Below, in pieces: positions 21,388-58,792 of a DNA stretch of 64,000 nt. How positions within the stretch are numbered: the stretch's first letter is position 1; the number at the start of each line of letters is the position of its first letter. The notes below the pieces were generated by a model. The model was not told where the DNA came from. It worked only from the letters and a program-made list of their open reading frames with translations, and searched no databases. Source of the stretch: Styela clava (Eukaryota); the NCBI RefSeq assembly GCF_964204865.1, contig NC_135252.1:7068001-7132000 (forward strand), in the 5' to 3' direction. Both the position numbers and the translations under genes were made by a program.

Positions 21388-22948
21388 CAGTGGCGGCGCG
21401 TCAATATGGCCAACCGGGGCAATGCCCCGGTTGTTTTTTCGGTATAATAAAAAATATTCGAAAAATACCTCAATATTGGTTGCACAGACTGTCTACAGTC
21501 TACACTAGCCATATTCTCCCGACATGGTTCATTTTTCGCTCGCAAAGCCTTCGCCGAACGTCGACGGGGCGACGCCGATTTTGCCCCGGTTGCTCATTAT
21601 TCTCTCTTATCTTCCACTCGCCGCGTTTGTCTCGTTTGTTTTCTGTTTCTTTTACTAAATCATCGGGGCCGATCGGGGCTAGCCCCGAAATTATGACGAC
21701 ACAATGCCGACGTTTCTTACAACAACGTGTTGACATATTCACGCATTGAGGCGGCAGGGGTAAAGCTTCTGCTAGAAGATGGTGAGTTTTCATTTTTTCT
21801 CGCTTTTTTCTCCACAATATTCTATCACGTGGATGTATTATACGGCGCATTGCAGTAAAGGCTAATGGATGGAGCGTCTGTGCAGTCGTGTATTTCAGAC
21901 TTCTGCGATGCTGTATCTCGTATCCGGGAAACAATAAAATACGACGACACATGGAGTGCTTCTTTACGCCGCGGGCAAACAACGCAGCGTTTGATTTTGT
22001 CTGCAAAGGAATGCTGTGACATTCTGGTGAATCAAATAGGCGATCGTCTGCGCACTGAACACCTTGCCGCGTTCTCTTTGATGAACCCCAAAAATTTTTC
22101 AAAATTTGCACGTCAATTTCCCATCCATTTGTTGGCTACTGTCTCCAAATTTTACCCCATGATAAACGTGGGTAAATTGGAAAATGAATTGCGATGTATA
22201 TACACCAATCAAACTTTTTTGAACATCACATCAACTTGCGCGCTCTATGGGTTCCTCATAGATAACACTCTAGTAACTACCTTTGCGGCGTCTGCAAAAT
22301 TTTTGGACATCATTTTGACGACGCCTATTTCTTCCGCCGACGCAGAGCGAACATTCAGCACGCTGAAGCATATTAAAACGTATCTCAGAAACACAATGAA
22401 GCAAGATAGATTAAATTCCTTGGCTGTTTTATCCATTCACAGAGACGTTATTTCTGCATGACTTTAATCAGCGCGTTATTGAGCATTTTGCTTCCAAGAA
22501 ACCGCGGCGTGTTGCATATATGTTCAAGCAGTAGAAGTCTAGCAGCATATATATCTATGAGTGAGCGACGCATGTCCTTATCTTTGCATTAACTTTCCTT
22601 TCTTCATAGTAACGTTTTGAACCTTATTTTAGGTTTTGTCTGCTTTCGCGAAGTTTCTGTTAATATGTCATTGTATTTATCTGGGTAAACATTGCCTTTC
22701 CTTTTGAAAGAGGTTTCAAAATAAACTATGTCTATATTTTTTAATCCCTTGACTTTGACCGGTTTTAAAGACACTTTCTTATCGTTAAAAATTGTCGCTT
22801 TTGCCGATTGGTTGTTACCGATGGAATGGTTTTTATACTCATAAAATGATGGGCGAACTTACAGCGCTCATCTTGTCCCCGTAGATGGGGGTGACTTGGT
22901 CCCGCAGTAGCTTGCCCTGGTTGTCAAAATGACCACGCGCCGCCACTG
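21388..22948 (+). mobile_element. Internally deleted, decayed hAT-superfamily DNA transposon
   Basis: 14-bp perfect TIR cagtggcggcgcgt / acgcgccgccactg, extending imperfectly (caacc.gggcaa); 8-bp TSD atatatat / ttatatat; carries only the transposase C-terminus. Confidence 0.9.
21767..22533 (+). pseudogene. hAT transposase C-terminal fragment (hATC dimerization domain)
   Basis: ORF 21865-22461 contains PISSADAERTFSTLKHIKTYLRNTMKQDRLNSLAVLSIH. There is an upstream in-frame stop (…YGALQ*RLMDG) and a frameshift near 22455 before the typical tail VIEHFASKKPRR. Confidence 0.85.
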
Positions 22949-25503: not shown

Positions 25504-25706
25504 GGTGACCGTACATTTGTACCCATGTACATTTGAACCCATGCGTATATCCACGGGTTCAATCTATATGCGGGTGCTAAAACCCATGGGTTAGGGTTAG
25601 TATGGGTTTAACTATCCATGAAACAAAAAAAATTCCATAGGTGCAATAGCATACAGGTGCAATTGTCATGGGTTCAAATGTACGTGGGTTCAAATGTAAT
25701 GGAACC
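25504..25706. mobile_element. Foldback/MULE-like MITE with 9-bp TSD (second copy 27857-28059)
   Basis: Inverted tacatttgaaccc / gggttcaaatgta repeats; perfect direct flank cctcaaaag on both sides; internal gggttagggttag. Confidence 0.75.
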
Positions 25707-26197
25707 CCTCAAAAGATGTCGTGATAACACGGTTGTGCAAATTGGTGCACAAAATAAATTCATTACAGAATTTTTTATTATCAATTTTACTTTCTGATTT
25801 CCTAAGGTTCCGCGAGGTGATATAAAAAACGTAGATGGGCAACAAAGTTTGAGAAACGCTGGTGTAACCGATCATTGTATGAAATTGTCGTATGCGTTCA
25901 ATTCCTATAATTTGTAAATTACGGATATATATATATATATTGTGTGTAAGTTTTTATGCAAAGTTACCAATGTGCAGCACATATTCAATTGCAATATATA
26001 TATATGACACTATTACAGATTTCTGATACGATAACGGAAGTTCATAGCAAAAATTTCTATTTTATTTTTATCCGTAGCTCGACTAATGAGAATATATTCG
26101 ACTATCCATTGCCACAAATGCTAACTCCTTATAAATCACATCCAACGTTACGTTTTTTCACTATGTATTATTCTACAGTAATTACTATTCTCATGCC

Positions 26198-27018
26198 CAG
26201 GGATGTAAGTTTCGAATATATTTTTTTCGAATCGAATTTCGAATCACAATGTTCCGATTCGAATATTTGCGAATCTGATTCTATTTAGTATATCATCATA
26301 TTATTGTTAACTTAGGAGGAAATATAGTATAAATTTTGATAAAATAACAATAATGAGCCCAAAGTAGGATTAAAGTTACTAGAAAAACACATTCCACGGA
26401 TTTATCGACTATCAAATATATTCCACATGAGATTTATTTTTTGTTAGTGGTCACATATTTATTTACATACAATATCGGTTTTCTAGTATCTAATGATTGT
26501 TTCTTCTAAAATTGATCTTCAAAATACACCCAAATGATAATCGCTACTTAGTACCGTTTGCGCCATGATTTTATAAGAAGCAATGATAACGTGGGAAGCA
26601 TCGCAGGCTGGTTTTTAATAATATATATATAAAGCAATGATGTTTTATTATAATAATATTATGTAGATAATTTGAAGGAACCTTTATATATTGAAATATT
26701 TGTGGGACTCCGTAACATTTTAATTAATAAAGAAAAATGAGCAAAACCATTGGCCCCTTTAAAGCTGCTACCAATATAAAATATAACAACTCTGGGAGTG
26801 TTAGACTTTGAAAAGCTGTAAACGCAAGGAAAATAAACGCTTTTGGGCGATATCGAGACTGCGCCGCTCATCGAGCGTCGTGCAAATGTCCTGTGTTATC
26901 TATGTAATTCATTTTTAAATAGAATCAAGCCTCTTTTTTCTAAATTGCTTCGAATCGATTCGAACTGATGTTGATTCGAATCGCTTCGATTCGAAATTCT
27001 GAAACTTTCAACCCCACG
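26198..27018. mobile_element. hAT-like non-autonomous element with TTCGAA subterminal repeats (second copy in the duplicate)
   Basis: Ends cagggatgtaagtttc / gaaactttcaacccc; clusters of ttcgaa at both ends; 8-bp TSD ctcatgcc / gtcatgcc. Confidence 0.65.
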
Positions 27019-30000
27019 GTCATGCCGTTTAATCCGGCAGAATCGGGCCTTAACATTGTTTTGGGACATAAAGTTTTTTTTATTGTTCAGATATAATGTA
27101 TATGACATATATAATGATACCCAGGTGGGTGTGGAGTGTATAATGTTGAGCAATTTTTTTTAAGTGGATTCAAAGTATTCGGTCCAAGATGACGCACATC
27201 CTGAACCCTAACCTGGTAAACATACAATGTTCGGGTTGTACGCCATCTTGATACGAATACTTCAGGAGCGCCTTTTTGTTAAAAACACTTATTTCATAAC
27301 TACATGGTTTAGTTTTGCATACATAGTAACATTAAACCTCCTTACAATGTCAGAAATTCAATTTTAGTAGAATAAATGGTAGTTTATTTCACTAATACAA
27401 GCCAAGATCCATCGACAGCATCTAGCCACTTTCTATTGCGCTATTCAAACTACATTTGCATTGCCGCGCGCATTTCGTTTTCCTAGTTTAAGCTTAGGGA
27501 CTTGGGAAATATTTTATTAGTTGACTTGGATTGGAATATTTGACCTTGTCTTTCACTCCGAACAAGGCCATGTAAAACCATCCACTGGTATCTAAAGATG
27601 TATAACGTGTTTTCTTTTGGAAGAACCGCAACCTTTCAGTGCTGCATTGACTTTGGCAAAATTAATATATCCTTGTGGAGATAGAAGGTATGCGTATGCG
27701 AAACCGAGATGTGCACCTGTTATGCCAACATAGTTGAGTCAAACGTTTTGAATACTAGTACATCTTCATTTTATCAGAGCTATAATTTTTTGAAACCACG
27801 TACTCTTCTCAATGGCATGTTGGCTTGAAACTGGGAAAGCCCGGTAGCCTCAAAAGGGTGACCGTACATTTGAACCCATGTACATTTGAACCCATGCGTA
27901 TATCCACGGGTTCAATCTATATGCGGGTGCTAAAACCCATGGGTTAGGGTTAGTATGGGTTTAACTATCCATGAAACAAAAAAAATTCCATAGGTGCAAT
28001 AGCATACAGGTGCAATTGTCATGGGTTCAAATGTACGAGGGTTCAAATGTAATGGAACCCCTCAAAAGATGTCGTGATAACACGGTTGTGCAAATTGATG
28101 CACAAAATAAATTCATTACAGAATTTTTATTATCAATTTTACTTTCTGATTTCCTAAGATTCCGCGAGGTGATATAAAAAACGTAGATGGGCAACAAAGT
28201 TTGAGAAACGCTGGTGTAACCGATCATTGTATGAAATTGTCGTATGCGTTCAATTCCTATAATTTGTAAATTACGGATATATATATATATATATTGTGTG
28301 TAAGTTTTTATGCAAAGTTACCAATGTGCAGCACATATTCAATTGCAATATATATATATATATATATGACACTATTACAGATTTCTGATACGATAACGAA
28401 AGTTCATAGCAAAAATTTCTATTTTATTTTTATCCGTAGCTCGACTAATGAGAATATATACGACTATCCACTGCCACAAATGCTAACTCCTTATAAATCA
28501 CATCCAACGTTACGTTTTTTCACTATGTATTATTCTACAGTAATTACTATTCTCATGCCCAGGGATGTAAGTTTCGAATATATTTTTTTCGAATCGAATT
28601 TCGAATCACAATGTTCCGCTTCGAATATTTCCGAATCTGATCCTATTTAGTATATCATCATTTTATTGTAAACTTAGGAGGAAATATAGTATAAATTTTG
28701 ATAAAATAACAATAATGAGCCCAAAGTAGGATTAAAGTTACTAGAAATACACATTCCACGGATTTATCGACTATCAAATATATTCCACATGAGATTTATT
28801 TTTTGTTGGTGGTCACATATTTATTTACATACAATATCGGTTTTCTAGTATCTAATGATTGTTTCTTCTAAAATTGATCTTCAAAATACACCCAAATGAT
28901 AATCGCTACTTGGTACCGTTTGCGCCATGATTTTATAAGAAACAATGATAACGTGGGAAGCATCGCAGGCTGGTTTTTAATAATATATATATAAAGCAAT
29001 GATGTTCTATTATAATAATATTATGTAGATAATTTAAAGGAACCTTTATATATTGAAATATTTGTGGGACTCCGTAACATTTTAATTAATAAAGAAAAAT
29101 GAGCAAAACCATTGGCCCCTCTAAAGCTGCTACCAATATAAAATATAACAACTCTGGGAGTGTTAGACTTTGAAAAGCTGTAAACGCAAGGAAAATAAAC
29201 GCTTTTGGGCGATATCGAGACTGCGCCGCTGCATCGAGCGTCGTGCAATTGTCCTGTGTTATCTATGTAATTCATTTTTAAATAGAATCAAGCCTCTTTT
29301 TTCTAAATTGCTTCGAATCGATTCGAACTGATGTTGATTCGAATCGCTTCGATTCGAAATTCTGAAACTTTCAACCCCACGGTCATGCCGTTTAATCCGG
29401 CAGAATCGGGCCTTAACATTGCTTTGGGACATAAAGTTTTTTTTATTGTTCAGATATCATGTATATGACATATATAATGATACCCAGGTGGGTGTGGAGT
29501 ATATAATGTTGAGCAATTTTTTTTAAGTGGATTCAAAGTATTCGGTCCAAGATGACGCACATCCTGAATCCTAACCTGGTAAACATACAATGTTCGGGTT
29601 GTACGCCATCTTGATACGAATACTTCAGGAGCGCCTTTTTGTTAAAAACAATCATTTCATAACTACATGGTTTCGTTTTGCATACATAGTAACATTAAAC
29701 CTCCTTACAATGTCAGAAATTCAATTTTAGTAGAATAAATGGTAGTTTATTTCACTAATACAAGCCAAGATCCATCGACAGCATCTAGCCACTTTCTATT
29801 GCGCTATTCAAACTACATTTGCGTTGCCGCGCGCATTTCGTTTTCCTAGTTTAAGCTTAGGGACTTGAGAAATATTTTATTAGTTGACTTGGATTGGAAT
29901 ATTTGACCTTGTCTTTCACTCCGAACAAGGCCATGTAAAACCATCCACTGGTATCTAAAGATGTATAACGTGTTTTCTTTTGGAAGAACCGCAACCTTTC

Positions 30001-36600: not shown

Positions 36601-39600
36601 TTAAAAACTTGTATCATTCATAATAGTCAAATCCATGTAAGTTATGATATCTTCACTTGTGAAGTTTAAATGTAAAATTTGATATTCAACCGAATAATGA
36701 AAACTTGTTCAATTTTGTAGATATGAATTAATTTTTTATTGAAAAATGTTTGGTTCAAATTTGCCTCAAACTTTCAGCTTATTCTTCAGCATCTGGTAAC
36801 GTTTTTTCACTTTTCCTATTAATGAGTGTAAATTTAGGTAGAAATTACAGCATTGTCATGTTTGTATATATATTTACTCATAAGTAGTAATCAATAATAG
36901 ACACAGGATAACTAGCTCACTGTTAAACAGCTTCCTGCTACATGTTAGCATTGACTCATACTTTTCTTTTCAACATTGTGTTTTTAAGTATTCCTGTCAC
37001 AAAAATGGAAAGTTGTTTTTGTTGCTAATATTACTCAATATTTGAATGAAATATTACAGAATAGCTATCGGCGATGCTGAAATACCTTTTTGTCTACAGT
37101 CATGTATGAAGCCATTCCAGTATGCAATTGCAGTATCGAATTATACATCACAATATGTTCATCAACATATTGGGAAGGAACCAAGTGGAAATATGTTTAA
37201 TGCAATCATGTTAAATCAAGAGGGTAAGTTTACAAAAGTATGTTTGTTTGGTGAAGAACTTTACAATTACAATATTGTAGTGTCGTCTATTCAGTAAGTA
37301 ATATGTTATGGGATTAGGTGTCCTCTCTTGTTCTGAGGCAAAAGAATTAACGATACATTGAAACTTTAAGCTAGTGTTTCCCATTCGGGGAAGAATTTTG
37401 CCGTCTTGGGGAAAGCAGTTTCGCTATAGTATTACTTATGTTTTTTAGTTCTTTATTATTATTATGATCTTTAAAGAACTTTACAATGTTTATTATAGTC
37501 TATTCGAGTAATAGTGATATGTTATGGGATTAGGTTTCGTCTCTTGTTCTGAGACAAAGGAATTAACAACGCATTGAAACTCTATGCTAATGTCCACACA
37601 ATCACTGATAGGATTATTTTATATGTGCTATCTCGGCATAGCTTTCTTAAAGAGCCTCTTCCAGTGTTTATATAAACGAGCAAAGTGTCATTTGAAATTA
37701 TCTTCAAATAAAATCCTAGTTTTCACACATTATGATACTGATCCAATATTCTAGTACTCTATGAAGTAAAAAATATGTACGCCTTATGCGCCTGTCTCAT
37801 GAATTGACAAATCCAAATCTAAGCAATTTATTGACAGTGTGCCTCATGGTCCATGAAATACGATAATCCTATATTTAAAATTCCCTTTCACAGTAGTTTG
37901 TTGCAGTTATTTATTTCTGAAAACTTTAGAATACTATCCGAATCATTGTACTTTAAAGGCCATGCTGAAATGTGTTGTTTTCAAATTTTCATCTATGTCC
38001 TTTTTATCCTCCAGACCAACCACACAATCCTATGATAAATGCTGGGGCACTAGTAGTGTGTTCACTAATAAAACCTGAACTTCCAGTGGCTGAGAGATAT
38101 GTTCATGTAAGTTTGCTTAGTGTTGTACTTGTAGTAAATAAACACATTTCATGCGAGTGACCTCAGCTGTATTGGCTTATTTGATTTGATTTTTTTTTTC
38201 ATTTAGAAGTAAAATGGTATATGTCGCTCTCATTGTTTTAGCACAGTATGGTGATCTGTTAATTTGTATTACCAATGGGGTAGAAATCTATGACTGAATT
38301 ACGCAATATGTGAATCTCAAGTGCATTCTTTAGTCAAAATTTAAATAAATATTTTCGTTGTTTTCGGAAACTTTTGTGGCCATATTTGTTTATCGTACTT
38401 CCCACAATTTTATATTAATAGTGATATTTTTGTCAGAAGGAAGAATTCTTATTTCAATTCAGGTTCAAAATATTATTAGTGATATGGCCGCAGGTGAATA
38501 CACATCATTCCACAATGCTGTATTTCAATCTGAAAAGGCAACATCATACCGGAACTTTGCTCTTGCTTATTTATTAAAAGAAAAAAATGTAAGTAACTTT
38601 TTACATTAGAAATTTATTGTAAATACTTTCTTAAAATTCTAAAATCATATTCTATTTAGTGTTTCGCTGATGGTACATCTGTAGAAGAGACAGTGGATTT
38701 ATATTTGCAACTATGTGCATTTAAAATGACATGTTCATCTGCATCTGTGGCAGCTGCTACTCTAGCCAATGGTGGTGTTTGTCCTTTGAAACCAGAAAGA
38801 AGGATATTAAACTCTGATGCAGTGCGGAATACACTGGCATTGATGCACTCCTGTGGGATGTACGACTATTCTGGTGTTTTTGCCTTTCATGTGAGTTTGT
38901 ATTTTAATTAAATGGCGTACAAATTTTAAAGTGATTAGGTATAAAGATGAATATATGTTACAGGTGGGACTCCCGGCAAAGTCTGGTGTCGCAGGTGGCT
39001 TAATGCTTGTTATTCCAAAAGTGATGGGAGTTACAATATGGAGTCCTCTGCTAGATGAAAAAGGTAAGAGTTTTTTTTATTAAAAGAAGAATCTATCTTC
39101 TAGATCAGTGTACTTCGTAGTTTTCCCGTCATGTCCCACTTGGCACCGCAAAATTTTTTCGCGACACCTGAGAATACAGAAATGTGAAAAAATAATAATA
39201 AAACAGACAATAATTTAGGTGAGGCTGAAATGATCACACAAAAAAACGAATCTTGGCTCTATTTCGGTGATGGTGGGTCTCAGTATTTGATCCTTTGTTT
39301 GTTTTAACATAAGTTGGTGCCGAAAAATATTTTACCATGGGATCAGGACCCCCAGTTTGAAAAGCCCTATTCTAGATCAGCGTTTCCAAACTGGGCACTC
39401 ATCCTGCGGACCATGAGCAAAGATTTTCATTAGGTGTCATTCATGCCGACTGCAATAATTCAAATAAATTGATCCAGTTTGTAAACCTCCATCCTCCAAA
39501 GCACTCGCAAAATGAAAATAAAAAAGTTTACAATTGTAAAGTATAGGGAGAAATTTTCTTGGGTCAGAGGTTGGGAAACACTACATTTGTTTTAAATGTT

Positions 39601-45600: not shown

Positions 45601-48600
45601 AGTTTATGCCTAGTTTGGATTTATAGGTTATGAAATGATCTAGATAAAATGAATGCCTTCTCACTTTTTTCTTGCATGTTTGTTGAATGACATTTGTGTT
45701 GTTTGATTGCAACATCGGATTCTCTTAATAAATTCTTTCCCATTCTGGTAATTGCCACTTGTTTTGGGGAATGATTCTCACATGGAATGACTTCTTGTCT
45801 GACAGAAAAAAAGTGACATGAATAAAACCATTGATTTATCTCTGGAATAAAACAAATTTATGAAAACAAGTGACAACATTCAGTTATTTAAACACATAGG
45901 CCTAGTCCATATATATTAAAGAGAATATCACAGTATGCTTTGAGAATCAATCTAATCCAGAAGTTCATCTTACAATAAGCTTTTTGTCATTCCTGACTTT
46001 AGAATTCGATTTTCCTATCCATCCAGAGAATAGGAGAGGAAATTTGATAATCAAACTCAATCGCATGGTACATCACAGCCTCTCTTCCCCTTTACCTGTT
46101 CATATCAGATATGGGTATAGCTAACAAATTATAGATTTCAGATGCATGCACTTGTTGTGGTGGAAGAATAGTGCTAACATAAACCATCTGTCCTACAACG
46201 ACAACAAATTCAGCAATGCTGTCGCACATAGTTATCCCAGACAGGATTGGTACCTGTGAAGTGTGTACCCAACACTATTTGTGAGCTTCGATTCAGTTTT
46301 TTAATACAAGGCCTATATCAGGATGGTCCGAACCAAGGCCCATAGTGTTTGTTCTGTATTGCACTGCATACCTATTCTTGGCACTATTGTGGCCTGCGAA
46401 CAATGCAAAAATAACTTTGTGGCCCCCGGAGTCGACAACCTTGGACCACCCTGGCCTATACAATCCGAATAGAGATCACTTAAAATACCTTCTCCAATGT
46501 CCTTCAACTCCGGATTTAAAATAAACTGAGCTTGGGGCAAGCGATGAAGCAGGTACAGAATAGAACTCCTGTTCTTCAGTTTTCATGTCTTCTTCATTTT
46601 CTTTATTGTCATCATCATTGTCTTCAAGTCTTAAAGCAGTTGGTAAATTGGTTGCAATTGCTTCAATATTTCTCTGTAATTTTGATTTGATGGCTGGAGA
46701 TGCTAGAATACAGAAAAAATTTCAAAAAAAATTTAACGATTTGCAATGGATAAATACTTTTTCAAATACTTACATCCAATACCCTCTGTTACAGCAGCAA
46801 TGGCAATATCATGTGGTGCAGAAATTGCAGTTATAGTTTGAGGATGATCTTCTATAGAATCTGGATTATCATTGTCACCATTGTAATAAGGATGTTTCGT
46901 CGGCGAAAGCATCCGAGCTGATTTCTAGAAATAGAATATTGAACATAAGCATAATACTCTTCATATATCAGTAACAGTAAATGTAGGCTATTTCCCATTT
47001 AGAAATCTAATATATTATAAACCATGATATTATAAAAAAAAAAGTGTTTTGAAGATCTCAAATGCTAAAAATTTAATTTATTCAGAATATTGAACAAGTT
47101 CTGAATTTTTTGAATATAAAAACATTAATATGAATAGTAAATGCTAATAAATTAAACATAGGGGTATTTTTTTTGTGGGTGCAGTGACGTAGTGGTTACT
47201 GGTTAGATCGCTGGGCAACAGCTTGAACATTTCAAGTTCAAACTCCATGCCCACAGCTTAGCCGTGGATTCAATAAATTGGAAAAGCAATGCTGAAATGG
47301 ATACTTAGAGCGGTGTTTCCCAACTTTGGTCACCTGAAATTTTTCTCTGGCCTCTTGTTTTTTCAATAATAACCTTGAAAGTACTGATTTTATTTTGTTG
47401 GGGACGACTGGCTTAGAGCATTAGTTCCCAAGTATTTATGATTGCTTGTCCGAAGCTTTGCGCAAGGTATGGGTATGAAAGCGATTAATAATAACATTGA
47501 TTCAAGCACATCCATATTTAAATAGTGTCAAATTCTAACATCTTTTCTTGGATTCCCTCATAATATACTGAAAAATGAGTACAAATGCTATAAAATATAA
47601 TCATTCTGTAAAATGATAAATGTACTGTAAACGGAAATTTTAAAAATAGTAACAAAAACCCTTTTTTAATAACACTAATTTTAAATGTGGTTCATCTGGA
47701 TTACTTGGACAACCAAAAACACAACTCACATCTCTAGTTGCACTTGTGCCCCAAAACCCTCCAGGTAACCCTTTTTCTTCTTCACTGTCTCCATCTGGGT
47801 CATTTTCTTGAGATCTAAGAAAACTGCGCTCAATCAGATTCTTCCTTGCTTTCCTGTGTAGTCTTTCTATCTCAGATGATTGTTTTACAAGAGCAGTTGC
47901 ACCCTATGAAATGGATGCTAATTAAACCCAGGAAACAAAAAAAATGACAAAAATTTCATTAGAGCACTTTACTCACTTTTTCAGTAGGATATTCATGTTT
48001 GTAATGGGCTGTCAATTTACCAGATGCATCGATGGTAACTTGATTAATATTATATGTACATCTATTCTTTTTGGGCGTTAAATTCTCAGCTGCAGCTACA
48101 CTTCGATATAAAATTTCTTGTTCCTCTTTCATCTGAAATATTTGAAAGTAAATTAATTACCGTAAACAAACATAAGCTGGAAATAGGTTACAATTACACC
48201 CTAAAATAAATTGTACTGAATTCGGGTATTTCATTATAGTTTTTTTAGGATGGAAAATAGGCTGAATTCATTTTCAAGTTTTATATAGACTTAACTAATT
48301 TGATACTAGGTTTGAGAGCTGAGAGTAATTTATTTATTAATGCAATATAACCAATACAATTTTTTTAAATGAAAAAAATACAAAAATCAAAAAAGCAGTT
48401 TTATAATAGGAGAGATTTCATGATCATATCGGGGGAGTGGGATCTCATAAAATTGCTAAATGATATAGCAAATCTTTATCTCTTGTTCAGTTACCAGTAC
48501 ATAGACACCAGGTATACACTTCTGATGCACGAACATAAATATATTGAAGAATGAATTCAGAGATCCATTTAAAAAAATATCCCATTCTCAATTTCATAGC

Positions 48601-51600
48601 AGATGTAAACACTAATATTGAATCGAGGTAAATTTTTTGGTCAACTTTGTATTATTGGAACCATGAAGTGTTCAAGTACAGCAAATACAGAATTTTGATA
48701 TATTTCAATACGTACATTTTCTGATTGTGCCTTTGTGGCAACCTGTCTTTGGGCTCTACTAATCTGAGTCACCCTCTTCTGTACATTTCGTTGAAACTCT
48801 TTCAATTTCATTTCTTTCTCTTCAATAACTTTGTCGATCTTTTGTTGTTCAATGATTGCATCATGCTAAATACAAGCAAGAGTGTCAATGAGTGATGACA
48901 AATCCTCTACAAGTAAATAACTTTACTGATTCAGATAATGCGAGTGCCCTTGCTTTGAGCAACCATTTACGAGCATTTTTAAGATACACTATGGGCAAGA
49001 CAGCAACAATTTGTTTAGTGATGACCTAAAATTAAAAATGTCACAAAATACAAGGTATCTGGAGGTCAAATTGGTTCGCTAGGTACTAATAAAATAAAAG
49101 ATTTAATAGGTCTTCTACCTGAAAAGTTAACAATTCTTGTAGCTTTTAGTTATCTAAGGAGAGGGTAACTAGGTAGGTAACTAGGGAGAGAAATACCACC
49201 AAATCACATACTACAAAAAATCCTTGAATTATTGGGTGAAATATAATCATTCACAAAAAAGTAATGGAGCAGTTCCTGAGTGCTGGAACCAGAATGAAAT
49301 AAAATATGATTGCGATAAGAAGGATAATCATGAACATTGGCCACAATGAAGCATCTTATACAGTCGCAAAAGGTTTCAAAACTGTAAGAAACTCATCTTC
49401 AATTCTTGTAAATAGCACATGAAAGCAGATGATGCTTCCGAACTCAGCGAACTGGTGCCCAGATGACTGATCCATGATTACTCACCAAGACATAATCTCT
49501 GACCGAAGCAATAAATATACCAAGTCCAAGACCCTAGCAAAGTGATAGCTAATACTTTATTACCCATTGCAAATATTACCGTAAATTCGTTATAAGCCAT
49601 AACGCGTTTCCTTAGAAATCTACCTTAATAAACAATCCCTGATATCAATACTAGATAACAACTTCTCGGGTCAGAATCAGCCAGTTTTTTTGAACATATA
49701 TTTCCTTTATTGCAATAAATACGGTAATCAAATAACAGTGACGATTTCATGATGAATATATTCTAACTTACAAATCAATAACATACATGTGAAAAAAGGT
49801 TAATATTACAGAACAGATCAGATTTAATCACTTCCTTATAAAAGATAGTAGCAATATACAGAGTTAACTTCACTGAAAAATTAATGAAATCTATTTTGGC
49901 TGAGCTTGACTAAACCTATGATTTTAACTTGGCAAGAATTGAAATTAGAATTGAGCTTGTGGTACATTTTTGTTACAATATTATTTATTGAGAATAGAAT
50001 TCCAAAGTAATTCGATCATTTACATACTACTAGCACCCATACAATGTATATAACTTTTCCATATGATCAAAAATATTTATACATAGGTAAACATTGTATT
50101 GAGGTCAAATGTATTAAAATTTGAATATTCCTATATATAAAAATTCTGGTTTGAAAATATTTCATCATCCAATAAAAATTTATAATGTATGCAAAAAAGA
50201 TGATAGTTTAGCAATATAATTTGTAAAACAAACATTTAAAGTTCTGCAAAAAAAATCTGAATTACCATATATCCTCGCATATAAGCTGAGTTTAAAACTC
50301 AAAAACAGAATTGCCATACCAAGAGGGCGGCAGAACTAACTCTGGTCGCACTAAAAATTTGGCTTATACACACAAAGCTCTGAGCACACTCAAATAAAAG
50401 ACATTATGCTAACTTTAATTCAACAGCTACAAGTTCTCACGCAAAGCAGCATTTGAAACGCTATGACAGCGATATCAGTCTGTGATTGGTTGTCATACAC
50501 ATGATCGCTTGTTTAGATTTGTAGGGTCGGCTTATATGCTAATTTTTATGAATTCACCGTTTTAGAGCAGTTTTTTTGGGGGGTCAGCTCATATGTGAGG
50601 GAGGATATATGGCAGGTCAGGATTTACTTTTCATAAAGCATTCTTTTTCAACATACTACAACGTAGCAAACACAGGTGAAACCAACTATGTCAAAAGATT
50701 GATTTCACTTATACTTAATGATGTAAGAACATTTACCGGTACACTTTCTGATGAGAAGTTGAAGAACTTGGACTGAGTATGGTGCAGTGTTATAATGACC
50801 AATAAATGCTTTTCATGTTTGAACAAGGAAAATTAATAATTTCTGTTAGAATTATAAAAATGAAGATAATGAGGAGTTCAATTATTTTGAGGTTGACAAA
50901 ACTGTTTAAAAACAAAACAAGATTTCAAAGGTGTAATGTTGGGAAGCATAATATAGAATAACATGGACATATTATAAATTGATTAGGAGAAAATCATATT
51001 GTCATAGTTTATTTTATTGGACTGAAAACAATCATCTTATAATTTCCATTCGCTACATTGTATAAAATGCATAGAATCGATGAATCGATGAAATAGAACA
51101 TCAAGCCAATAATATTACCAAATATATGTTTGGATGGATCGCTTTGGCACAACAGCATTGAAATTTAAATTTTTAGATGAGCCATGTACTGAAACAGTAA
51201 ATGAAACATCTGTGTCTTCCTTGTTTAAGACAACCATGACTGTATAGCCATCTTTTCTAAATACAGCAGTATATTTGATTTTCAGTTGTTGATCGGACTG
51301 TGAATGTACTCTAACAGAATTTTCATTGATATACTTTGAAAAATGTCCGAGATGATAAAACATTGGTTGCTTGTAAAATTCATCTGCCGTGGCATTGACA
51401 ATAATCGGACTATTATCAAAATTTTTTACCCAGTTAGGGCCTCCTTGCATATCCAAGCACATGTTCCAATCCACCCATCCTACAGCCCAGTTATTCAAGT
51501 TGTCCAAAATATCATTGCTGTACTTTTCCCCCATTTCCCAGTTGCCGATCGATTCTGTAGGTGGATGTTTCACACAGGCTTCAGTAGCCAAAATAAATTT

Positions 51601-54600
51601 ATCAGGAAATAAATTATGAGTAATATTAAGCACTTCAGGTCCAATAAGCCAATCCCAATACCAATGAACTCCTATACCAGAAACATACTTCGCAGCACTT
51701 GGATCAGATAAGACTTCTTTAGGCCATGCCGGTAAAAATACACGTTGGTCATCATGGATCATTAATTTAACATTACCATAACCCTTCTTTTCCAGCATTG
51801 GACCTAAGTCAGTCTTCACGAAGTCTTTTTGTTGTTCTGGTGTCCAACCCATTGCTTGCCATTTAGCAGCTAAAACCAGACCATTAGATGGTTCATTTTG
51901 CATAGTAACACCCCAAAAATTGATTCCCTCTTTCTTGTATTCATCGAAAAATCTTGTAAAATATTCTGCCCATGTTTTGTGATATTTATCACCAGCTTTA
52001 CCTTGTAATCCCCCTATACCAATTTCATCACCACTTGTTTTCATCCATGCCGGAGCTGTCCACGGACTTGCGTAAAGTGAAATATTTTTCATAGTCATGG
52101 AGAAGATTTGCTTTAGCAATGGAATTTTGAATTTGATATCCTCCATAGCAAGAGCAAAAGTGCTCAAGTTAAAATCATTTGGTTTGTCTAGATAGGTATA
52201 TTCTCTTGTTGAATAATCACATCCAGCCATTGGAATTCGAATAAGATTGTACTCAATACTACCTTTGCCAAAGTAGGATTTCAGTAAATTATCTCTTGAT
52301 TTGGGCGAAAGCGACATGATGTTAATGGAGGCAGCGTCAGTTAAAGCACCACCAAAACCTTTGATTGCCTGGTAAAATTTTGTGGTGTTGATAATGATAT
52401 TGACAGACGAATCTTTTTTGAAGTTCTCATGAAGGTATTCAAGATCATAAAATGTTGATGAAAGCGATTACCGCTCATTGAAGATGTCAGGACAAGTAGT
52501 TTTCCTTTTCCCGGAAAAGTTTTGTTTAGAGTGTCACAGTATGTTGAGTTACAGACACAAACTGAAGAATCGCTCCCATACTTTCTAACAACACATGGAG
52601 TGCTCGTGGTAGCACCGAGCAAAAGAAAAGTATTTACCAAGAATATATATAACCTATACATTATTGTGCTTAGTAAATCCTGAAATACATATACTGTTGT
52701 TTGAATACAAATATAAGACAGAACCTGACAGCTTAAACTACAATCGTTGTGTTACTGTAATCAAAAAGCTCATAGATTGCGGTCATAAGGTAGACTAGGT
52801 CTAAATAACACTTGCGAATTGACGAAGCCGTATGAGGTACCGAACTGTTGTACTGGGATTGTTGAAGTTGATACATTCTGCAGCTCTAAAGGGTGTTCAT
52901 AATGTAACTTTTATGGGGACTGATGTTCAAAAAACGAGGACGTAGGCTAATCATAATAAAATTTGAGGCATATTGAAAAACTGATGCTGGACTACTAGAG
53001 TACAGCAGTATGATACTAGCTTGGGGGTCTCGTGTAGTTTCATACTTCTAGTAGGCGTACCGTAAACGCAGGTAACTTCGGATGGTTTGTAACTTCGGAT
53101 GAAATTTTCAAACGTTTATATCTTGACTAAATTACGTCATATTTTGCTTCTGGCAGTTTCTATAGAGAGTCCTTATATATCTAAATCTGTTATCATATTC
53201 AATCGCCTAATCTTATTTATTTTTTGACACAAAAAATCACATTTTATCCAAAAATTGACACCTTGTTTTTAAGCGGCTAACATAGCGAATTCTGTCGCCG
53301 CTAACTTCACTAAAAGACCATCAATCGCTAGAGGGCATACACAATGTACAAGGAAAATTACAGTGATCACGAGATGTCGTGTGCGATTCAAGTAAAATAT
53401 ATTATTTTGATTTAAAAATTTCGTCAAAATATCGACGTTACGAGGCTTACGCTGAACGTGACGTCAACAACGTGATTCAATTTCGCTCCATTTAACGCCG
53501 ACGTCACATTGCGTAGCTCGCTGCGACATTTGAACGCCAGACTATGTGGCGCCACGTGTAGTTAAATATAAAGTGAAAGCTCCTACCTGATCCTAGTCAC
53601 CAAATCCTACAAAAACTTCATTATAGCCCCAGTCATATGCTGTTTATTCATTGTGAATCCGTTTATTGCACATCAAATTTGTGCGTTAATATTTTTGCAT
53701 TCATTCTCCGAACGTATAGATGTTGTTGATACGTAAGGCTAATGAACAGCCAGTTACGCGTATCTATACTATCACAATGATAAGGTATGTATGTTTACGA
53801 TGATAATATCTTAAGCGTAGAAATAGAATGTTGCACAGGTGAGCATGAAACTCAGGTGCACTCAGTAGCAGGTCGAAAAATGAAGAAAAGAGTATCAAAG
53901 TTTCTATTTGGCGTTTTTATCTGTTTCATGTCATTTGACTTTGTCTATCTGCCTGTGAATACATTATATCTGAATTATGAACACGAGCCACAAGCTACAC
54001 CGTTCCATATTGTTTTCCATTTCCACTGCCATTTTTTACTACCTATCGTAATTCATCATTCGTTTTATTATTATTTTCATTCGTTTCATTTTTGCTTCGT
54101 ATTAAAATTGGTTTTCCACTTCCATTTTTACGACTTAGTTTATTCGTCTGTTTTTTTTATTTTCATTTGTCCCACGTTGTCTCATTTTTGTTTTGTATTA
54201 AAACGATCATATTAGCAACATCTAGCACTTTCATGAAATTAAGAATAGTCAGAAGTAAATGGTTCAGTTTTGCGAAATGTCAGAAATAGCGCTGGGCAAA
54301 ATTATCATAAATTATTACATGCGTTGTATTTTGAAGCATTTTAGCGGTAATAATTATGGCGTGACACTGTCAAAATCGTCGAGTAAAGTGCTGTGTTCGC
54401 AAATTCCGTAGATAAAATTGTGAGTTAGTCGGTAACGATTTTAGCTATAATAACCGTCCGGTTATTGTTTTGTCCAAAAAAAAAACGTTAAAACTTGAGG
54501 GAAATAGTTATATATAATTAGGACCAAAAGCCCAATGACAAGTATAAATGCATAACGGCCGATTTATTCAATTATTATTATAAATAAAAATTCAGGATTC

Positions 54601-57600
54601 GTGCAATCGCAGGTGCAAAGCATAAGAACGTCAATCATCGTCTTCATAAATATCTCCATCCCGGTGTCGCTTTAAACTCGAACGATTAATAATATACAAA
54701 CAGTGATAAGATCAAAGCCAACACTTAAGATAATGAAATCAGTCCTTCTTGTCTTCAAGAGCTGTTGCCGACGTAAACGCACGGGTATACCAGATCAATG
54801 ACATTAAGCATGCTGCTAATGTCATTGACCAGATATATAAAACTTCAATGTCCGCCGACCCGAAAGAATTAACAATCGGAAAAAAATAAAACGGCCGTCA
54901 TAGATGAACGTCAGTGTGCGACACGCAAAACGGATCACGGCATCGTAAGTTCTACGCAGCGACGTTATAACGCGTCACTGATCACGCAGACATTTCTCTC
55001 TCACGACGAAGTGACGCAAAGCGAAAAGTGGCCATCCGAAGTTAGAAACATTTGGAATACAGATCTGCAGACAAATAAAGTCAATAATTTGAATGAAAAA
55101 GGGTATTGACTGATATGAAACTGAGTTTATCGTGAAGAGAAAGGCATCAATGTATTATATTCCAAGTTTGGCTTCAATTGAACAATAAACGGCGGAGAAA
55201 TTGTTTATAATATAGTGAAATCATCCGAAGTTACCTGCTTTTACGGTAGCATAACAATCTTTCGACATGCCAATCCTAACCCTCATTTGAGTACGCCATC
55301 CAAAAATTACGTCACTACGACGTCACAATCACGTCATAGAGCTTATCAAATATGATCGCCCGAAATGGCATCAGCGCTGACGATAAAGAACTGACTAAAG
55401 TCAGCGATCTCTCTCCTATCGGGATCAATGCAACGTGTGAAATGGCTGTTCGATTTCGGGTTATCGTCTGCGCATCTTGGATGACAGTTCGCATAGTTTG
55501 AAGGGCTCCATTACGTCACTGTGACGTCGTAGTGACATAATTTTTGGATGGTGGGGGTTAGGATTGACACGTGAAAAAATTGTTATGCTACACCTACTAG
55601 AAGTTCGTTAGGTACGAAACTACATGAGACCCCTAGTTTGGTAATAAATTAAAATTTGCCACAAAATATCGTAAGTCCACACCCACATCAGCACATAGAA
55701 TAGTCTATTCTGCTATTGGACAACAGTAGGTACGGGTACTGTATTCAAACCATACATCTCGAAAAATATCTACATGTTGGCTTAATATAGCTTATGTACG
55801 GTTTACCATAACCATCTCACTAGCAAATAGGCCTAGTCAACTGTCCCACCCTGCTAGACACCCTACAAACACACCTGAAAATGCGTTAATAACTACACGA
55901 AAGCTCTGCACAACAGTCCTAAAATCCACTGCCTGTTGGTGCCATCTAGCGGAGATATAAAGCCATCTCGTATTAATTCAGATCATAAGCCAGGTCAAGT
56001 ATATTCTACATCTATCGCGATCTCCAAAGTGTAACCATTAGTAAAATTATCCGCACTTGTATGATGCTTACAACAACAGCGGTATTTTTTAAGGAAATTT
56101 ATAGACAGATAGACCAAGTACACTGCACGGCAAGTAGACGTAGTTACGTTTATCTGTCTATGAGAGGCCATAAGAGCCAAGGTGCTTTGGGAGTGCAGAA
56201 TTTATACGATCGCTTCCAACCGAAAATACTACTACATCCGCGTCTCTATCTCACCCCACCCCATCTACGCATTCAATCAGCAAATAAAACTTCATTTCTG
56301 GACAGTTACCTTTTTTCCTTAACGCCAATCGCAACTTCCATGCATACGATTGATTCGTAACTCCAAAACTCAAATTAAATATGCCATTGAATAAAATGTC
56401 TACCTATTGCCATTACCGTACATCGCAGCACACACTTGATGTGAGTTGATGCATTTATTTGACTTGTATTTTTAAAAGTTTAAAGAGCTCATGGAAAAAG
56501 CTTATTACCGTACCAAAAGGCGCCCCGTGGACCGGTTTGCAACGATTTACTATCGATCTGCGAAAAAAAATTGTAGTTTCTCTGCTAGCGCCACTGCTTG
56601 GTTAACGTAAGGACAATGTTGGTTACTTTCTTGACAATCTTTCCGTCGTTATATTGAGTGTTTGACAAGTGTGAATGTGTGATATTATTTGCGGCGATGT
56701 TTTGGTGGCCGGGTATCACACTTTCCGATCCATCGCGAAAGCGTTTTGTTAATTCTCGCCAATGTCTAATATCTAAAAAAATATACTGTACATCTACGCG
56801 TTTTAGTCCACACCACCCTCGCATACAAGTGAACAAGGATATGTGAGTATTATCGTACTTGGACAACAAAATAAACAACTCTTAAATAAAATATTAAGCA
56901 CGTTATAGTGATATAGTCCTTTCCCCTTTTAGTATAATACATATCAGATCAGATAAGAATATTACTTGTTCCAAAATTTCTGCTCAAATGTGGAATGAGA
57001 TTGACATTTTAATCATAATTAATGGGACGAATATTTTTAACAATTTCCGACCCACATTCGTGTTTGGTATCATCGAGTAAACTAGAATTTTCCTTTAAAA
57101 AATTTATTTCAAAGAGTGTCGCATAATGCTCCTTGTACCACATTGCACGGAAAATGTCATATATAACTGTAGGCCACATTGTTTTATATATATATTATAG
57201 CAAAACAGTTCAATAGGCATGACTTTGAAAAAATAAGAATGTCGCATTGTTCAAAAAAGTGTCCACCGTTAGTATAAATCGTATGATTTGTCACTTTGTA
57301 TGCTGCCGTAACGCGTAAAAATAGTAAGTGTGGAAGGAAGCCTGTAACTTTCGAACTATGAATTTTGAGCAAGTCGCAATGCTACTTATGCCTTTGTTTT
57401 TTAATATGTTGTGTTGATAGTAGATGATCCTATGATTTTACATAATCATTCCACAACGAGTGACTTATTGGTGAAAAAAGCTCGTTCGTTACTCGTTAAA
57501 AGAGCCGACTTCTTCAGCCAAAAAAATATGCAATACATGGCCGACACGAGCATTTTTAAATTTCTCACAATATTAATTCAGCGTAATAGTATTCAACGTA

Positions 57601-58792
57601 ACTCGGCGGCGTTTAATTAATTTTAAGACATGGTCGGTGGAAAAATTTCAAGGTCGACGAAAAAAGTACAATTCATTTTAGTGCAATAAAAATGATTGAA
57701 CATACGTCACATTAAGTAGCTTATTATTGTAATCCGGGGAAACGTCGGGTGCCGCCAGGCGGGAGTTCAAGAATGAATAATTGAATGGTCCAACTTCAAT
57801 GACTACGGTATAGTTTTCAACTAATCACAATGATTCGGCCATATCATTGTCTAAAATAACATTTGGTGTTTTCGATATACTTCAGGTATTTCAGGTATAT
57901 AACATCGTTCTCAGTCCCAGTACTCACTGTCTGCATACGCATCGCCAATCCTGCGCTTTTGCTCGGTCTCCCCGTTCAACGTCACGCACTTTTGCGCAAC
58001 CTTACTCCTTTTTGTTACAATTTAATATCTTGTACAACTCAATTCCTATATAGACAGGATATATCCTACTCTCAACCTCTATAAATTGTATTCTACATTA
58101 TTTTAAATCTTAATCATATCTCATTTAGACACTCGCACCTCGACTGTCAAATGGTTAATACGTTTACCAAAATTTAATGAAGTAAATTTTGTTTGCTTGT
58201 CAAGAGATTTTGCAGAAGAGTTTGAATACTTTGAAACAAACCATTATTCTTTAAGAAAAAGGATATGTCACCTGTTCTAATTTTTTTTTATACAACACAA
58301 TTGTATGTTGTTTACTCTGAAAAAGGCTCCGCATAAGCAGCCGCTGTTAGGTGAAGAGCTAATTTATTTTAGAATGATTTTTATCATAAACATAGCATGA
58401 GTTGAACTACACTCAATATGCTTACTTTAACCATTTGCTCCACAATATTTATCTACCCTAACTCAGAACAATGCAACAAGTGTACTAACATTGTGACATG
58501 TGACTCTGTGAGGCACAGCATTTTTGAGACACCCCTAAAATATCAGAATAAGGTGATTTTAAAGTTACAAAACATAATATAGAAAGTTCTAACTTACCAC
58601 TGCCATAGACTGTGCTGGTTGTGATTCCACTTGCACCCAAACACTATCTGATAATATACCTTCTGGTCTTCCATTGAATATGTTTTTATCAACCAAAGGT
58701 AAAGATGTTGGAGTGGTGGGAAGAACTCGTATCTGTTTGGACACTGACATTTGAACAGCAGCCAACTGCTTTGAGCTACCCCTTTTTTGCAT
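42660..58792 (-). CDS. CCDC15: Coiled-coil domain-containing protein 15-like (centriolar), 11 coding exons, ~582-587 aa
   Basis: Exons (minus): 58598-58792 (…RPEGILSDSVWVQ, same spacing as human RNEAIVPVGAWVE), 48716-48865 (EKEMKLKEFQRNVQKRV), 47977-48132, 47730-47903 (LPGGFWG), 46774-46924, 46489-46702, 45665-45798, 45061-45217 (or -45202; RRVFSDMEREKVRE), 44245-44415, 43280-43428 (ITLPPLCCCSTTFWGTNPYTCANNCLFYRN, the CCDC15 C-terminal signature), 42660-42772 (AYTVALQSVL...stop). All phases are compatible; exon 1 is less certain than the rest. Confidence 0.85.
46319..46453. mobile_element. Short hAT MITE
   Basis: Ends caggatggtcc / ggaccaccctg; 8-bp TSD gcctatat / gcctatac. Confidence 0.75.
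47178..47270 (+). repeat. tRNA-derived SINE-like head
   Basis: A-box-like gtgacgtagtggtta and B-box-like gttcaaactcc at plausible spacing; I could not fold a full cloverleaf. Confidence 0.4.
50265..50612. mobile_element. TA-TSD MITE, family A copy 2
   Basis: ccatatatcctcgcatataagc...ggtcggcttatatgc...gaggatatatgg, homologous to 3421-3639. Confidence 0.65.
51008..51018 (-). promoter_or_regulatory. Overlapping AATAAA poly(A) signals ~100 nt downstream of the GBA stop
   Basis: Plus-strand tttattttatt equals two overlapping AATAAA on the minus strand; chance occurrence is possible in AT-rich DNA. Confidence 0.45.
51115..52661 (-). CDS. GBA: Lysosomal glucosylceramidase (GH30), intronless, with one frameshift at ~52415-52460; ~515 aa if corrected
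   Basis: Signal peptide and CVVRKYGSDSSVCVCNSTYCD lie in ORF 52341-52661. YQAIKGFGGALTDAA and the catalytic domain lie in the -1 frame (ORF 51115-52317): ASPWTAPAWMKT, QNEP (acid/base Glu), GVHWY, ATEAC (nucleophile Glu), GWVDWN, GGPNWVKN, FYKQPMFYHLGHFSK. Confidence 0.93.
52680..52687 (-). promoter_or_regulatory. Splice acceptor (TATTTCAG) 18 nt upstream of the GBA ATG
   Basis: Minus strand ATGTATTTCAG|GATTTACTAAGCACAATAATG; identical to the TATTTCAG acceptor of CCDC15 exon 3. Confidence 0.6.
53025..55632. mobile_element. Palindromic MULE-like MITE (~420 bp) split by a nested insertion
   Basis: The left arm (gggtctcgtgtagtttc...ttctagtaggcgta|gcataacaat...ccatccaaaaattacgtcactacgacgtcac) is the reverse complement of the right arm; 9-bp TSD ctagcttgg / ctagtttgg. 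Confidence 0.8.
53060..55246. mobile_element. 2.19-kb non-autonomous TA-TSD DNA transposon (Tc1/mariner-pogo-like ends)
   Basis: 25-bp TIR ccgtaaacgcaggtaacttcggatg / catccgaagttacctgcttttacgg, TA duplicated, subterminal aacttcggatg copies at both ends, no transposase ORF seen. Confidence 0.85.
55939..55952 (-). promoter_or_regulatory. CTCF-like motif
   Basis: Minus strand CCGCTAGATGGCAC closely matches the CTCF core consensus; motif evidence only. Confidence 0.4.

What the first reader, a model, noticed from the sequence alone, without database searches (positions are those of the whole stretch)
48866..58792. Intronless GBA nested on the same strand in CCDC15 intron 1, with an acceptor in frame to CCDC15 exon 1
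Seen in the sequence: CCDC15 exon 1 (58598-58792) ends GTG|GTAAGT in phase 0, and its next exon is ~9.7 kb away at 48865. The entire GBA gene lies between them on the same strand. GBA has a strong acceptor at 52680, and the 18 nt before its ATG (GAT TTA CTA AGC ACA ATA) are stop-free and in frame with that phase-0 donor. AATAAA follows the GBA stop. Known: nested genes are more often antisense, and vertebrate GBA1 has many introns, so this copy looks retroposed or intron-lost. Inference: one promoter and first exon could yield either a centriolar protein or a lysosomal hydrolase by alternative splicing and polyadenylation. The fusion would add 71 aa before the signal peptide, possibly converting it to a signal anchor. 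Alternatively the acceptor serves a private 5' UTR exon or, if this is a tunicate, spliced-leader trans-splicing. In-frame status has a 1-in-3 chance probability.
Basis: partly seen in the sequence, partly recalled or inferred. Interest (0 to 1): 0.8.

Follow-up and report, generated by a model that had tools for sequence, protein, structure and literature searches.

The report
Intronless GBA nested in host intron
A sea squirt's one-piece copy of the Gaucher-disease enzyme gene lies inside the first intron of a coiled-coil gene and seems to be expressed on its own, so it looks like an ordinary nested gene rather than one promoter making two proteins.

Summary
The anatomy is real. RNA-like contigs join host exon 1 (donor 58598) to exon 2 (48865), then to 48132. 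A GH30 glucosylceramidase gene with no intron in its coding part lies between them on the same strand. The 18 letters before its ATG are stop-free and in frame with exon 1.

The fusion reading is not supported. GBA contigs of two RNA runs stop at 52665 with no letters of exon 1. No RNA joint reaches 52679, and RNA depth is 0 in 52700-52899. The public Styela clava protein (515 aa, 509/515 identical) starts at the same Met.

The acceptor is TTTCAG|G, but its pyrimidine tract is poor, 7 of 15. Whether a spliced leader is added there stays open.

The copy belongs to an old ascidian paralogue clade. It is also intronless in an unnamed organism closer to Ciona and Phallusia. A paralogue in at least 9 coding pieces lies on another contig.

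The assembly lacks one letter at 52452/3. RNA contigs of three studies have it. The scan noted this frameshift on this window before (s1-820062).

The name CCDC15 could not be verified. Verdict: ordinary nested gene, low interest.

The parts
58598..58792 (-). Host gene exon 1, coding part: ATG at 58792, 65 codons, phase 0, followed by donor GTAAGT at 58597-58592
   Evidence: Its last 30 letters are the overhang of an X5 RNA contig at exon 2. A 70-aa homologue from another organism, P0122 (45% identity, E 5.7e-6), ends at the same boundary.
48866..58597 (-). Host intron 1, 9,732 nt, which holds the whole GBA transcription unit
   Evidence: Junction 58598>48865 in RNA contigs. RNA depth is 0 in 48900-49099 and 52700-52899, while the DNA run has about 8.4-8.9.
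48716..48865 (-). Host exon 2 (150 nt, 50 codons, coiled-coil-like)
   Evidence: Pieces of contigs X1 rec 1 and X6 rec 25, and the X5 loose ends on both sides.
47959..48132 (-). Start of host exon 3 (open frame MKEEQEILYR...). Only the start at 48132 is shown by RNA.
   Evidence: The X5 overhang at 48716 equals window 48103-48132. ORF listed.
51115..52661 (-). GBA-a coding region: one exon, 515 aa once the letter missing at 52452/52453 is counted, stop codon at 51115-51117
   Evidence: Pfam GH30 domains. Two ORFs in the assembly. RNA contigs are colinear with one extra letter. 515 aa, no internal stop, 509/515 identical to P0001.
52452..52453 (-). Site of the one-letter gap in the assembly that breaks the GBA frame
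   Evidence: 'T put in behind 52452' in 1 of 1 contigs of X1, X5 and X6 at full depth. Absent in DNA run X10. P0001 reads FHQQFYDLEY across it.
52662..52685 (-). Acceptor-like TTTCAG|G (AG at 52681-52680) and the 18-nt in-frame leader. RNA contigs end at 52665.
   Evidence: Contig ends of X1 rec 6 and X5 rec 22.
49685..51114 (-). Probable long GBA 3' UTR. AATAAA at 51018/51013 is read through, and cover ends beside the AATAAA at 49711-49706. The strand of the RNA is not shown by contigs.
   Evidence: Near-continuous RNA contigs from 52665 down to 49685-49725 in X1, X5 and X6. Hexamer positions.
50252..50625 (.). Short repeat with 25-nt inverted ends (MITE-like) inside the 3' UTR stretch
   Evidence: Inverted repeat I5. 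DNA depth is 66-78 against 8.4 beside it, with many loose ends at 50260-50546.
53057..55248 (.). 2.2-kb element with 31-nt terminal inverted repeats, many copies in the genome, no long ORF: a non-autonomous DNA transposon 377 nt upstream of the GBA acceptor
   Evidence: Inverted repeat I3. Own-genome matches to query 377-2568 include 3 places at 99% and dozens at 83-94%. DNA depth is 94-585.
55246..55635 (.). Foldback, MITE-like repeat next to the 2.2-kb element
   Evidence: Inverted repeats I1 and I2. Repeated matches to query 2566-2955.

Best explanation
This is an ordinary nested gene. GBA-a is an old, single-exon paralogue of lysosomal acid glucosylceramidase. It sits in the sense direction inside the 9.7-kb first intron of a coiled-coil gene. 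It is expressed as its own mRNA, whose 5' end lies at or within a few tens of letters upstream of 52665. Its 3' UTR runs to about 49690. The host's RNA polymerase reads through it, and the spliceosome removes it with intron 1.

Shown:
- the nesting;
- the host exon 1>2>3 junctions;
- GBA RNA that is colinear and free of exon 1 letters;
- the intact 515-aa frame in RNA.

Inferred:
- The 5' end comes from a start site in the 376 nt of unique DNA before the gene. TATA-like TATAT motifs lie at 52693 and 52715.
- This may happen with or without addition of a spliced leader at the AG of 52681-52680.
- The in-frame relation to exon 1 is chance (1 in 3).
For: Host junction:
- The X5 overhang at 48866 equals window 58599-58628.
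- X6 rec 25 has 285 letters before exon 2.

GBA RNA:
- X5 rec 22 (2,088 nt) lies on 50579-52665 from its first to its last letter.
- X1 rec 6 also ends at 52665.
- Depth is 0 in 52700-52899 in 3 of 3 RNA-like runs.
- No RNA joint involves 52679. The only RNA joint listed is 50332>50471, inside a repeat.

Public protein and family:
- P0001 (Styela clava, 515 aa) starts MYRLYIF at the same Met. It is the only hit at 90% identity or more among the 120 listed.
- Clade a has 100/100 support, and catalytic-type glutamates E257 and E361 are invariant in 20 of 20 sequences.
- The gene is intronless also in L011-L013, which encode P0010.

Splice sites:
- The acceptor tract is weak (7 of 15 pyrimidines) while the exon 1 donor is a consensus GTAAGT.
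- In Ciona an acceptor with a partner donor upstream is cis-spliced by preference (PMC1488885, passages). A working acceptor on host pre-mRNA should therefore give fusions, and none is seen.
Against: - Only contigs were available, not raw reads. They drop rare variants and cannot show starts, strand or level.
- 61 loose ends and 312 pieces were not shown.
- Exon 1 itself lay outside the 6,000 letters laid.
- The identical contig end at 52665 is unexplained. It would mean a 4-nt 5' UTR if it were the true start.
- TTTCAGG directly before the ATG is unlikely by chance: 11 in 128 kb of both strands.
- An orthologous gene also has a good acceptor-like site 72 nt before its ATG. Some splicing at the 5' end is therefore plausible, and its partner is unknown.
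- No promoter was shown.
Confidence: 0.72

Rival explanations
1. Intronic operon. GBA has no promoter of its own. Host pre-mRNA from the exon 1 promoter is cut into a GBA mRNA by spliced-leader trans-splicing at 52680 and polyadenylation near 49690 or 51000. This competes with removal of intron 1. One promoter would then give two proteins, but without a fusion.
For: - The animal is a tunicate: P0001 is 99% identical, and earlier notes say sea squirt.
- In Ciona most genes have trans-splice acceptors, and trans-splicing can compete with cis-splicing at the first acceptor (PMC11155486, passages).
- Single-exon genes are enriched in Ciona operons (PMC2760879, passages).
- TTTCAG|G lies 18 nt before the ATG.
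- There is no RNA cover upstream, which would fit a discarded outron.
Against: - No leader letters are seen on any shown contig.
- The strong GTAAGT donor upstream should favour cis-splicing, and no fusion is seen.
- Ciona operons have no DNA between cistrons. Here about 820 nt separate the last AATAAA-linked RNA end from exon 2.
- The species' leader was not found.
Confidence: 0.12
2. Host exon 1 is alternatively cis-spliced to 52679 and gives a protein with 71 extra residues before the GBA signal peptide.
For: - The 18-nt leader is in frame and stop-free, and the donor is phase 0.
- An acceptor-like site is present.
- Contigs cannot exclude rare isoforms.
Against: - 0 of 2 GBA contigs that reach the 5' region carry exon 1 letters (X1 rec 6, X5 rec 22).
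- No such joint is listed.
- The X5 and X6 host contigs run from exon 1 straight into exon 2.
- There is no longer public isoform among the 120 listed hits.
- Being in frame has a chance probability of 1 in 3.
Confidence: 0.05
3. The copy in this genome is a dying gene. The one-letter loss at 52452/3 is real and makes a null allele.
For: The assembly and DNA run X10 (probably the same sample) lack the letter, and the frame then stops after 106 aa.
Against: - RNA contigs of three studies have the letter.
- The public protein is intact and not flagged low quality in its name.
- The rest of the ORF is clean, and clade a is conserved across ascidians.
- At most this is one allele or an assembly slip, not loss of the gene in the species.
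Confidence: 0.08

Closest known systems
Lysosomal acid glucosylceramidase (GBA1, glycoside hydrolase family 30)
   Same: - GH30 TIM barrel plus beta-sandwich.
- About 50% identity to vertebrate GBA over 400 aa.
- N-terminal hydrophobic leader, and invariant glutamates in the NEP and TEAC motifs. Mapping these to the human catalytic residues is from recall.
   Different: - The coding part is a single exon. Vertebrate GBA1 has many introns (recalled), and the second copy in this genome has at least 9 coding pieces.
- It is one of two old ascidian paralogues.
Nested (intronic) genes of animals
   Same: A complete gene with its own mRNA lies inside an intron of a host whose flanking exons are spliced together.
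   Different: It has the same orientation as the host. It also lies in a tunicate, where trans-splicing could in principle process it from host RNA.
Ciona operons and spliced-leader trans-spliced genes (PMC1488885, PMC2760879, PMC11155486; passages read)
   Same: A single-exon gene with an AG acceptor-like site just before its ATG, downstream of another promoter on the same strand.
   Different: - No leader is seen on the RNA.
- The gene is not abutted to an upstream cistron's poly(A) site.
- It sits inside an intron, not between genes.
Retrogenes (processed, functional gene copies)
   Same: An intronless copy next to an intron-bearing paralogue. It is conserved and expressed.
   Different: No poly(A) remnant or target-site duplication is visible by eye. 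This is expected if the event predates the split of the ascidian orders. Stepwise intron loss cannot be excluded.

Membership tests
GH30 glucosylceramidase (GBA) | GH30 TIM-barrel domain and C-terminal beta-sandwich | tested here: met
   PF02055 E 2e-130 (435 bits, cut-off 23) and PF17189 E 2.3e-13 on the 400-aa ORF.
GH30 glucosylceramidase (GBA) | Conserved acid/base and nucleophile glutamates | tested here: met
   E257 and E361 (P0001 numbering) are invariant in 20 of 20 clade sequences. Their equivalence to the human catalytic pair is recalled, not computed.
GH30 glucosylceramidase (GBA) | Hydrolysis of glucosylceramide in lysosomes | not testable with these tools
   Needs an enzyme assay and localisation.
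Nested intronic gene | Host exons on both sides are joined in RNA across the inner gene | tested here: met
   The X5 contig overhang at 48866 equals window 58599-58628.
Nested intronic gene | The inner gene gives its own RNA | tested here: met
   Contigs on 50483-52665 in three RNA-like runs of three studies, with zero depth on both unique flanks. The strand is not shown by contigs.
Alternative-splice fusion of host exon 1 with GBA | RNA with the junction 58598>52679 | tested here: not met
   No such joint or overhang in the shown contigs of X1, X5 and X6. Contigs only, so rare forms are not excluded.
Alternative-splice fusion of host exon 1 with GBA | Open, in-frame path from exon 1 into the GBA ATG | tested here: met
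   195 nt in phase 0, then DLLSTI and Met. The chance probability is 1 in 3.
Spliced-leader trans-spliced gene or operon member | Leader sequence at the mRNA 5' end that is absent from the locus | tested here: inconclusive
   Contigs end at 52665 without foreign letters. The Ciona leader plus GT has 2 hits with one mismatch against 3 in the control. The 45 or more hits on C3 are a motif in a tRNA array.
Spliced-leader trans-spliced gene or operon member | Ciona-type operon: poly(A) site of the upstream cistron abuts the acceptor of the next | tested here: not met
   There is no cistron end at 52680. About 820 nt lie between the RNA end near 49690 and the exon 2 acceptor. The rule is from PMC1488885.
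Retrogene | Intronless copy of an intron-bearing parent or paralogue | tested here: met
   A single colinear ORF here. P0031 maps in 9 pieces over 4.3 kb of L090.
Retrogene | Poly(A) remnant and target-site duplication | tested here: inconclusive
   None seen by eye after the 3' UTR. No formal search was made, and the copy is old.
CCDC15 (name given to the host) | Significant sequence similarity to a named CCDC15 | tested here: inconclusive
   No Pfam family on 9 host exon or ORF pieces and P0122. The atlas was blank for exons 1 and 2. Exon 1 against 1.84 billion representatives gave only an unnamed 70-aa homologue and two repeat proteins. No named CCDC15 sequence was at hand. A likeness to the human N-terminus is recalled only.

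The most novel reading that the evidence does not exclude
GBA-a has no promoter of its own. Its mRNA is carved out of the host's intron 1 RNA by spliced-leader trans-splicing at 52680 and polyadenylation. One promoter would then serve a coiled-coil (possibly centriolar) gene and a lysosomal enzyme: an operon hidden in an intron. A rare in-frame exon 1-GBA fusion would be a by-product.
Probability: 0.12. Interest if true: 0.55.

Novelty: new member of a known kind. Interest (0 to 1): 0.2.

Why it matters
As it stands it matters little. It is a well-behaved nested gene, and the protein is already in public databases.

It gives two modest points:
- Ascidians carry two old GBA paralogues, one of them intronless in at least two distant lineages.
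- The reference assembly carries a one-letter break in that gene which RNA from three studies does not have. Annotators should not call it a pseudogene.

If the novel reading were true, the locus would be a clean case for asking how trans-splicing, cis-splicing and polyadenylation compete on one pre-mRNA in a chordate.

Tried and rejected
1. Host name. None of the following named the host. The joined spliced model was left out.
- Pfam on exon 1, exon 2, seven further minus-strand ORFs and P0122.
- The protein atlas on exons 2 and 1.
- phmmer of exon 1 against 1.84 billion representatives.

2. The species' spliced leader.
- The Ciona 16-nt leader (Table 1 of PMC1488885) plus GT is not enriched: 2 hits against 3 in the control at one mismatch.
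- At three mismatches, a block of 45 or more identical hits on G000:C3 at 24.85-24.92 Mb looked like a leader gene array. It is a motif about 40 nt upstream of tRNA genes in a tRNA array. Rejected.

3. Synteny. The intronless orthologue in metagenome contigs L011-L013 shows no detectable host exon within 10 kb. The best tblastn E-values were 2.4-8.7, and a motif scan was blank. This is inconclusive, because the host exons are short and fast-evolving.

4. Papers.
- 'spliced leader' + 'trans-splicing' + 'Styela' found 0 papers.
- 'glucosylceramidase', 'ascidian', 'intronless': none of the 10 listed papers contains 'glucosylceramidase'.
- 'nested gene', 'trans-splicing', 'tunicate', 'intron': no listed title is about nested genes processed by trans-splicing.
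- Supplementary files were not opened. Those of PMC1488885 and PMC11155486 may hold acceptor-site details.

5. A private 5' exon within 52681-54699. There is no RNA cover on unique DNA and no joint. RNA depth at 52900-54699 falls on high-copy repeats.

6. RNA editing as the source of the extra letter. The public protein, which is not flagged low quality in its name, is intact.


Full report
**What is there**

On the minus strand, an ATG at 58792 opens 65 codons that end GTG|GTAAGT at 58598. A GH30 glucosylceramidase gene runs from ATG 52661 to the stop at 51115-51117. Pfam gives PF02055 at E 2e-130 and PF17189 at E 2.3e-13 on the 400-aa ORF.

In this assembly the gene is split into ORFs of 106 aa (52341-52661) and 400 aa (51115-52317) by a one-letter shift. 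AG at 52681-52680 is followed by 18 stop-free letters (DLLSTI) in frame with exon 1.

**RNA evidence**

One search found 13 runs that hold the gene. Nine are transcriptome-sized and labelled 'RNA?' (three studies). Four are genome-sized runs from one sample. I laid X1, X5, X6 and the DNA-like X10 on 48700-54699. All are contigs, not raw reads.

X1, X5 and X6 behave as RNA:
- Depth is zero in 48900-49099 and 52700-52899, where X10 has about 8.4-8.9.
- They carry exon-exon joins.

Host gene:
- X5's overhang at 48866 is identical to window 58599-58628, the end of exon 1.
- Its overhang at 48716 equals 48103-48132.
- X6 rec 25 has 285 letters before exon 2, and X1 rec 1 has only 7.

Exon 1 > exon 2 (48716-48865) > exon 3 (from 48132) is therefore real, and intron 1 is 9,732 nt. 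The nesting is confirmed.

GBA RNA:
- X5 rec 22 (2,088 nt) lies on 50579-52665 from end to end.
- X1 rec 5 lies on 50483-52489 and rec 6 on 52511-52665.
- X6 rec 27 and rec 28 cover 50932-52591.
- All are colinear with the genome, with a single one-letter gap, so the coding part has no intron.

Further contigs continue almost without a break to 49685-49725, beside the AATAAA at 49711-49706. The AATAAA pair at 51018/51013 is read through. The likely 3' UTR is about 1.4 kb, with a MITE-like repeat at 50252-50625. Contigs do not show the strand.

**The 5' end and the fusion idea**

Two contigs from different studies stop at exactly 52665 with no foreign letters. The bin depth of X6 fits a third contig ending there, which is my inference. 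No RNA joint touches 52679.

If exon 1 were commonly joined to 52679, these contigs should run on into exon 1. They do not. The X5 and X6 host contigs run from exon 1 into exon 2.

The public Styela clava protein P0001 (515 aa) starts at the same Met. It is the only hit at 90% identity or more among the 120 listed, of 2,811 with E at or below 1e-20.

The fusion reading is thus unsupported. A rare isoform cannot be excluded, because contigs drop rare variants and 61 loose ends and 312 pieces were not shown.

**The acceptor**

- TTTCAGG is rare: 11 in the window on both strands, about 9 expected. Its place 18 nt before the ATG is therefore suggestive.
- Its pyrimidine tract is poor, 7 of 15. 35 YAG sites on the same strand of the intron have 10 or more.
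- The orthologue in L011 also has a good acceptor-like site 72 nt before its ATG.

From the Ciona literature (passages read):
- Acceptors with an upstream partner donor are cis-spliced by preference (PMC1488885).
- Trans-splicing prefers the first functional acceptor and is helped by weak first donors (PMC11155486).
- Single-exon genes are enriched in operons (PMC2760879).

The host donor here is a consensus GTAAGT. If the GBA acceptor worked on host pre-mRNA, fusions would be expected. Their absence points to a separate start downstream of exon 1, with or without a spliced leader.

TATA-like TATAT motifs at 52693 and 52715 (by eye) would fit starts near 52665 and 52685. I could not find the species' leader, so this point stays open.

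**Origin**

- The genome holds a second GBA on contig C6. It is about 50% identical and P0031 maps to it in 9 pieces over 4.3 kb.
- In a tree of 22 proteins the window's type forms a 100/100 clade with Ciona intestinalis, C. savignyi, Phallusia and Clavelina. The other type pairs Styela with Ciona (100/100). The order of these clades and the vertebrates is unresolved.
- Three metagenome contigs of one unnamed organism encode P0010 as a single 513-aa ORF. P0010 is 68% identical to Ciona and Phallusia and 60% to Styela.

The intronless state is therefore old. Retroposition is plausible, but its hallmarks are gone. Host exons were not detectable near that orthologue, so conservation of the nesting is unknown.

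**Intron content**

| Window stretch | Content |
|---|---|
| 52681-53056 | unique |
| 53057-55248 | 2.2-kb element with 31-nt inverted ends; copies up to 99% identical elsewhere |
| 55246-55635 | foldback repeat |
| 55636-58597 | gave no other match |

Only 40 of 2,951 candidates were scored.

**The frame break**

All three RNA-like runs have a T behind 52452 on the + strand, at full depth. X10 does not. With that letter the ORF is 515 aa, without an internal stop, and 509/515 identical to P0001. This is an allele of the sequenced animal or an assembly slip, not a dead gene.

**Host name**

Exon-by-exon searches gave no name. P0122 shows that exon 1 is conserved in another organism. A likeness to the N-terminus of human CCDC15 is my recollection only. 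CCDC15's centriolar role is from the listing and abstract of PMC10630097. The word search in that paper found nothing on orthologues. The joined spliced model was not built or searched.

**Verdict**

The striking interpretation is not supported. This is an ordinary same-strand nested gene of an old intronless GBA paralogue.

Noticed in passing
window 52452-52453: The assembly lacks one letter that RNA contigs of three studies carry, and the DNA run of the likely source sample lacks it too. This breaks GBA after 106 aa in the reference only. It is either a null allele of the sequenced animal or an assembly slip.
   Followed up: partly
window 53057-55248: A 2.2-kb element with 31-nt terminal inverted repeats and no long ORF. 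The genome has three copies at 99% identity and dozens at 83-94%, so a non-autonomous DNA transposon has been active recently.
   Followed up: partly
window 55246-55635 and 50252-50625: Two short foldback, MITE-like repeats. One abuts the 2.2-kb element. The other lies inside the stretch covered by GBA 3' UTR RNA.
   Followed up: no
window 37046-39083 (+): Exons of a glutaminase gene (PF04960, E 1.5e-15 to 6.9e-21 on three ORFs). It lies on the opposite strand and converges on the host gene's 3' side.
   Followed up: partly
window 21865-22461 (+): ORF with a hAT-family transposase dimerisation domain (PF05699, E 2e-10): a remnant of a hAT transposon.
   Followed up: no
window 25618-30000: Two near-identical tandem copies of a unit of about 2.35 kb. 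Paired ORFs lie at 25618/27971, 25956/28294, 26659/29021 and so on.
   Followed up: no
G000:C3:24847563-24923046 (L089 = 24872000-24878000): A large tandem array of tRNA genes with units of about 1.8 kb. An 18-nt motif about 40 nt upstream of one tRNA gene in each ~1.8-kb unit differs from the Ciona spliced leader plus GT by two letters and holds an ATTTGCAT octamer. It mimics a leader gene array in pattern searches.
   Followed up: partly
window 52665: RNA contigs of two independent studies end on the same letter, 4 nt before the GBA ATG, with no overhang. It may be a true start site or a library effect.
   Followed up: partly
L011 19585-20839 (-): In the unnamed organism that carries the intronless orthologue, a helicase-like ORF (UPF1/MOV10-like by eye) and reverse-transcriptase remnants lie 4-9 kb downstream of GBA. 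No host-like exons were seen.
   Followed up: no
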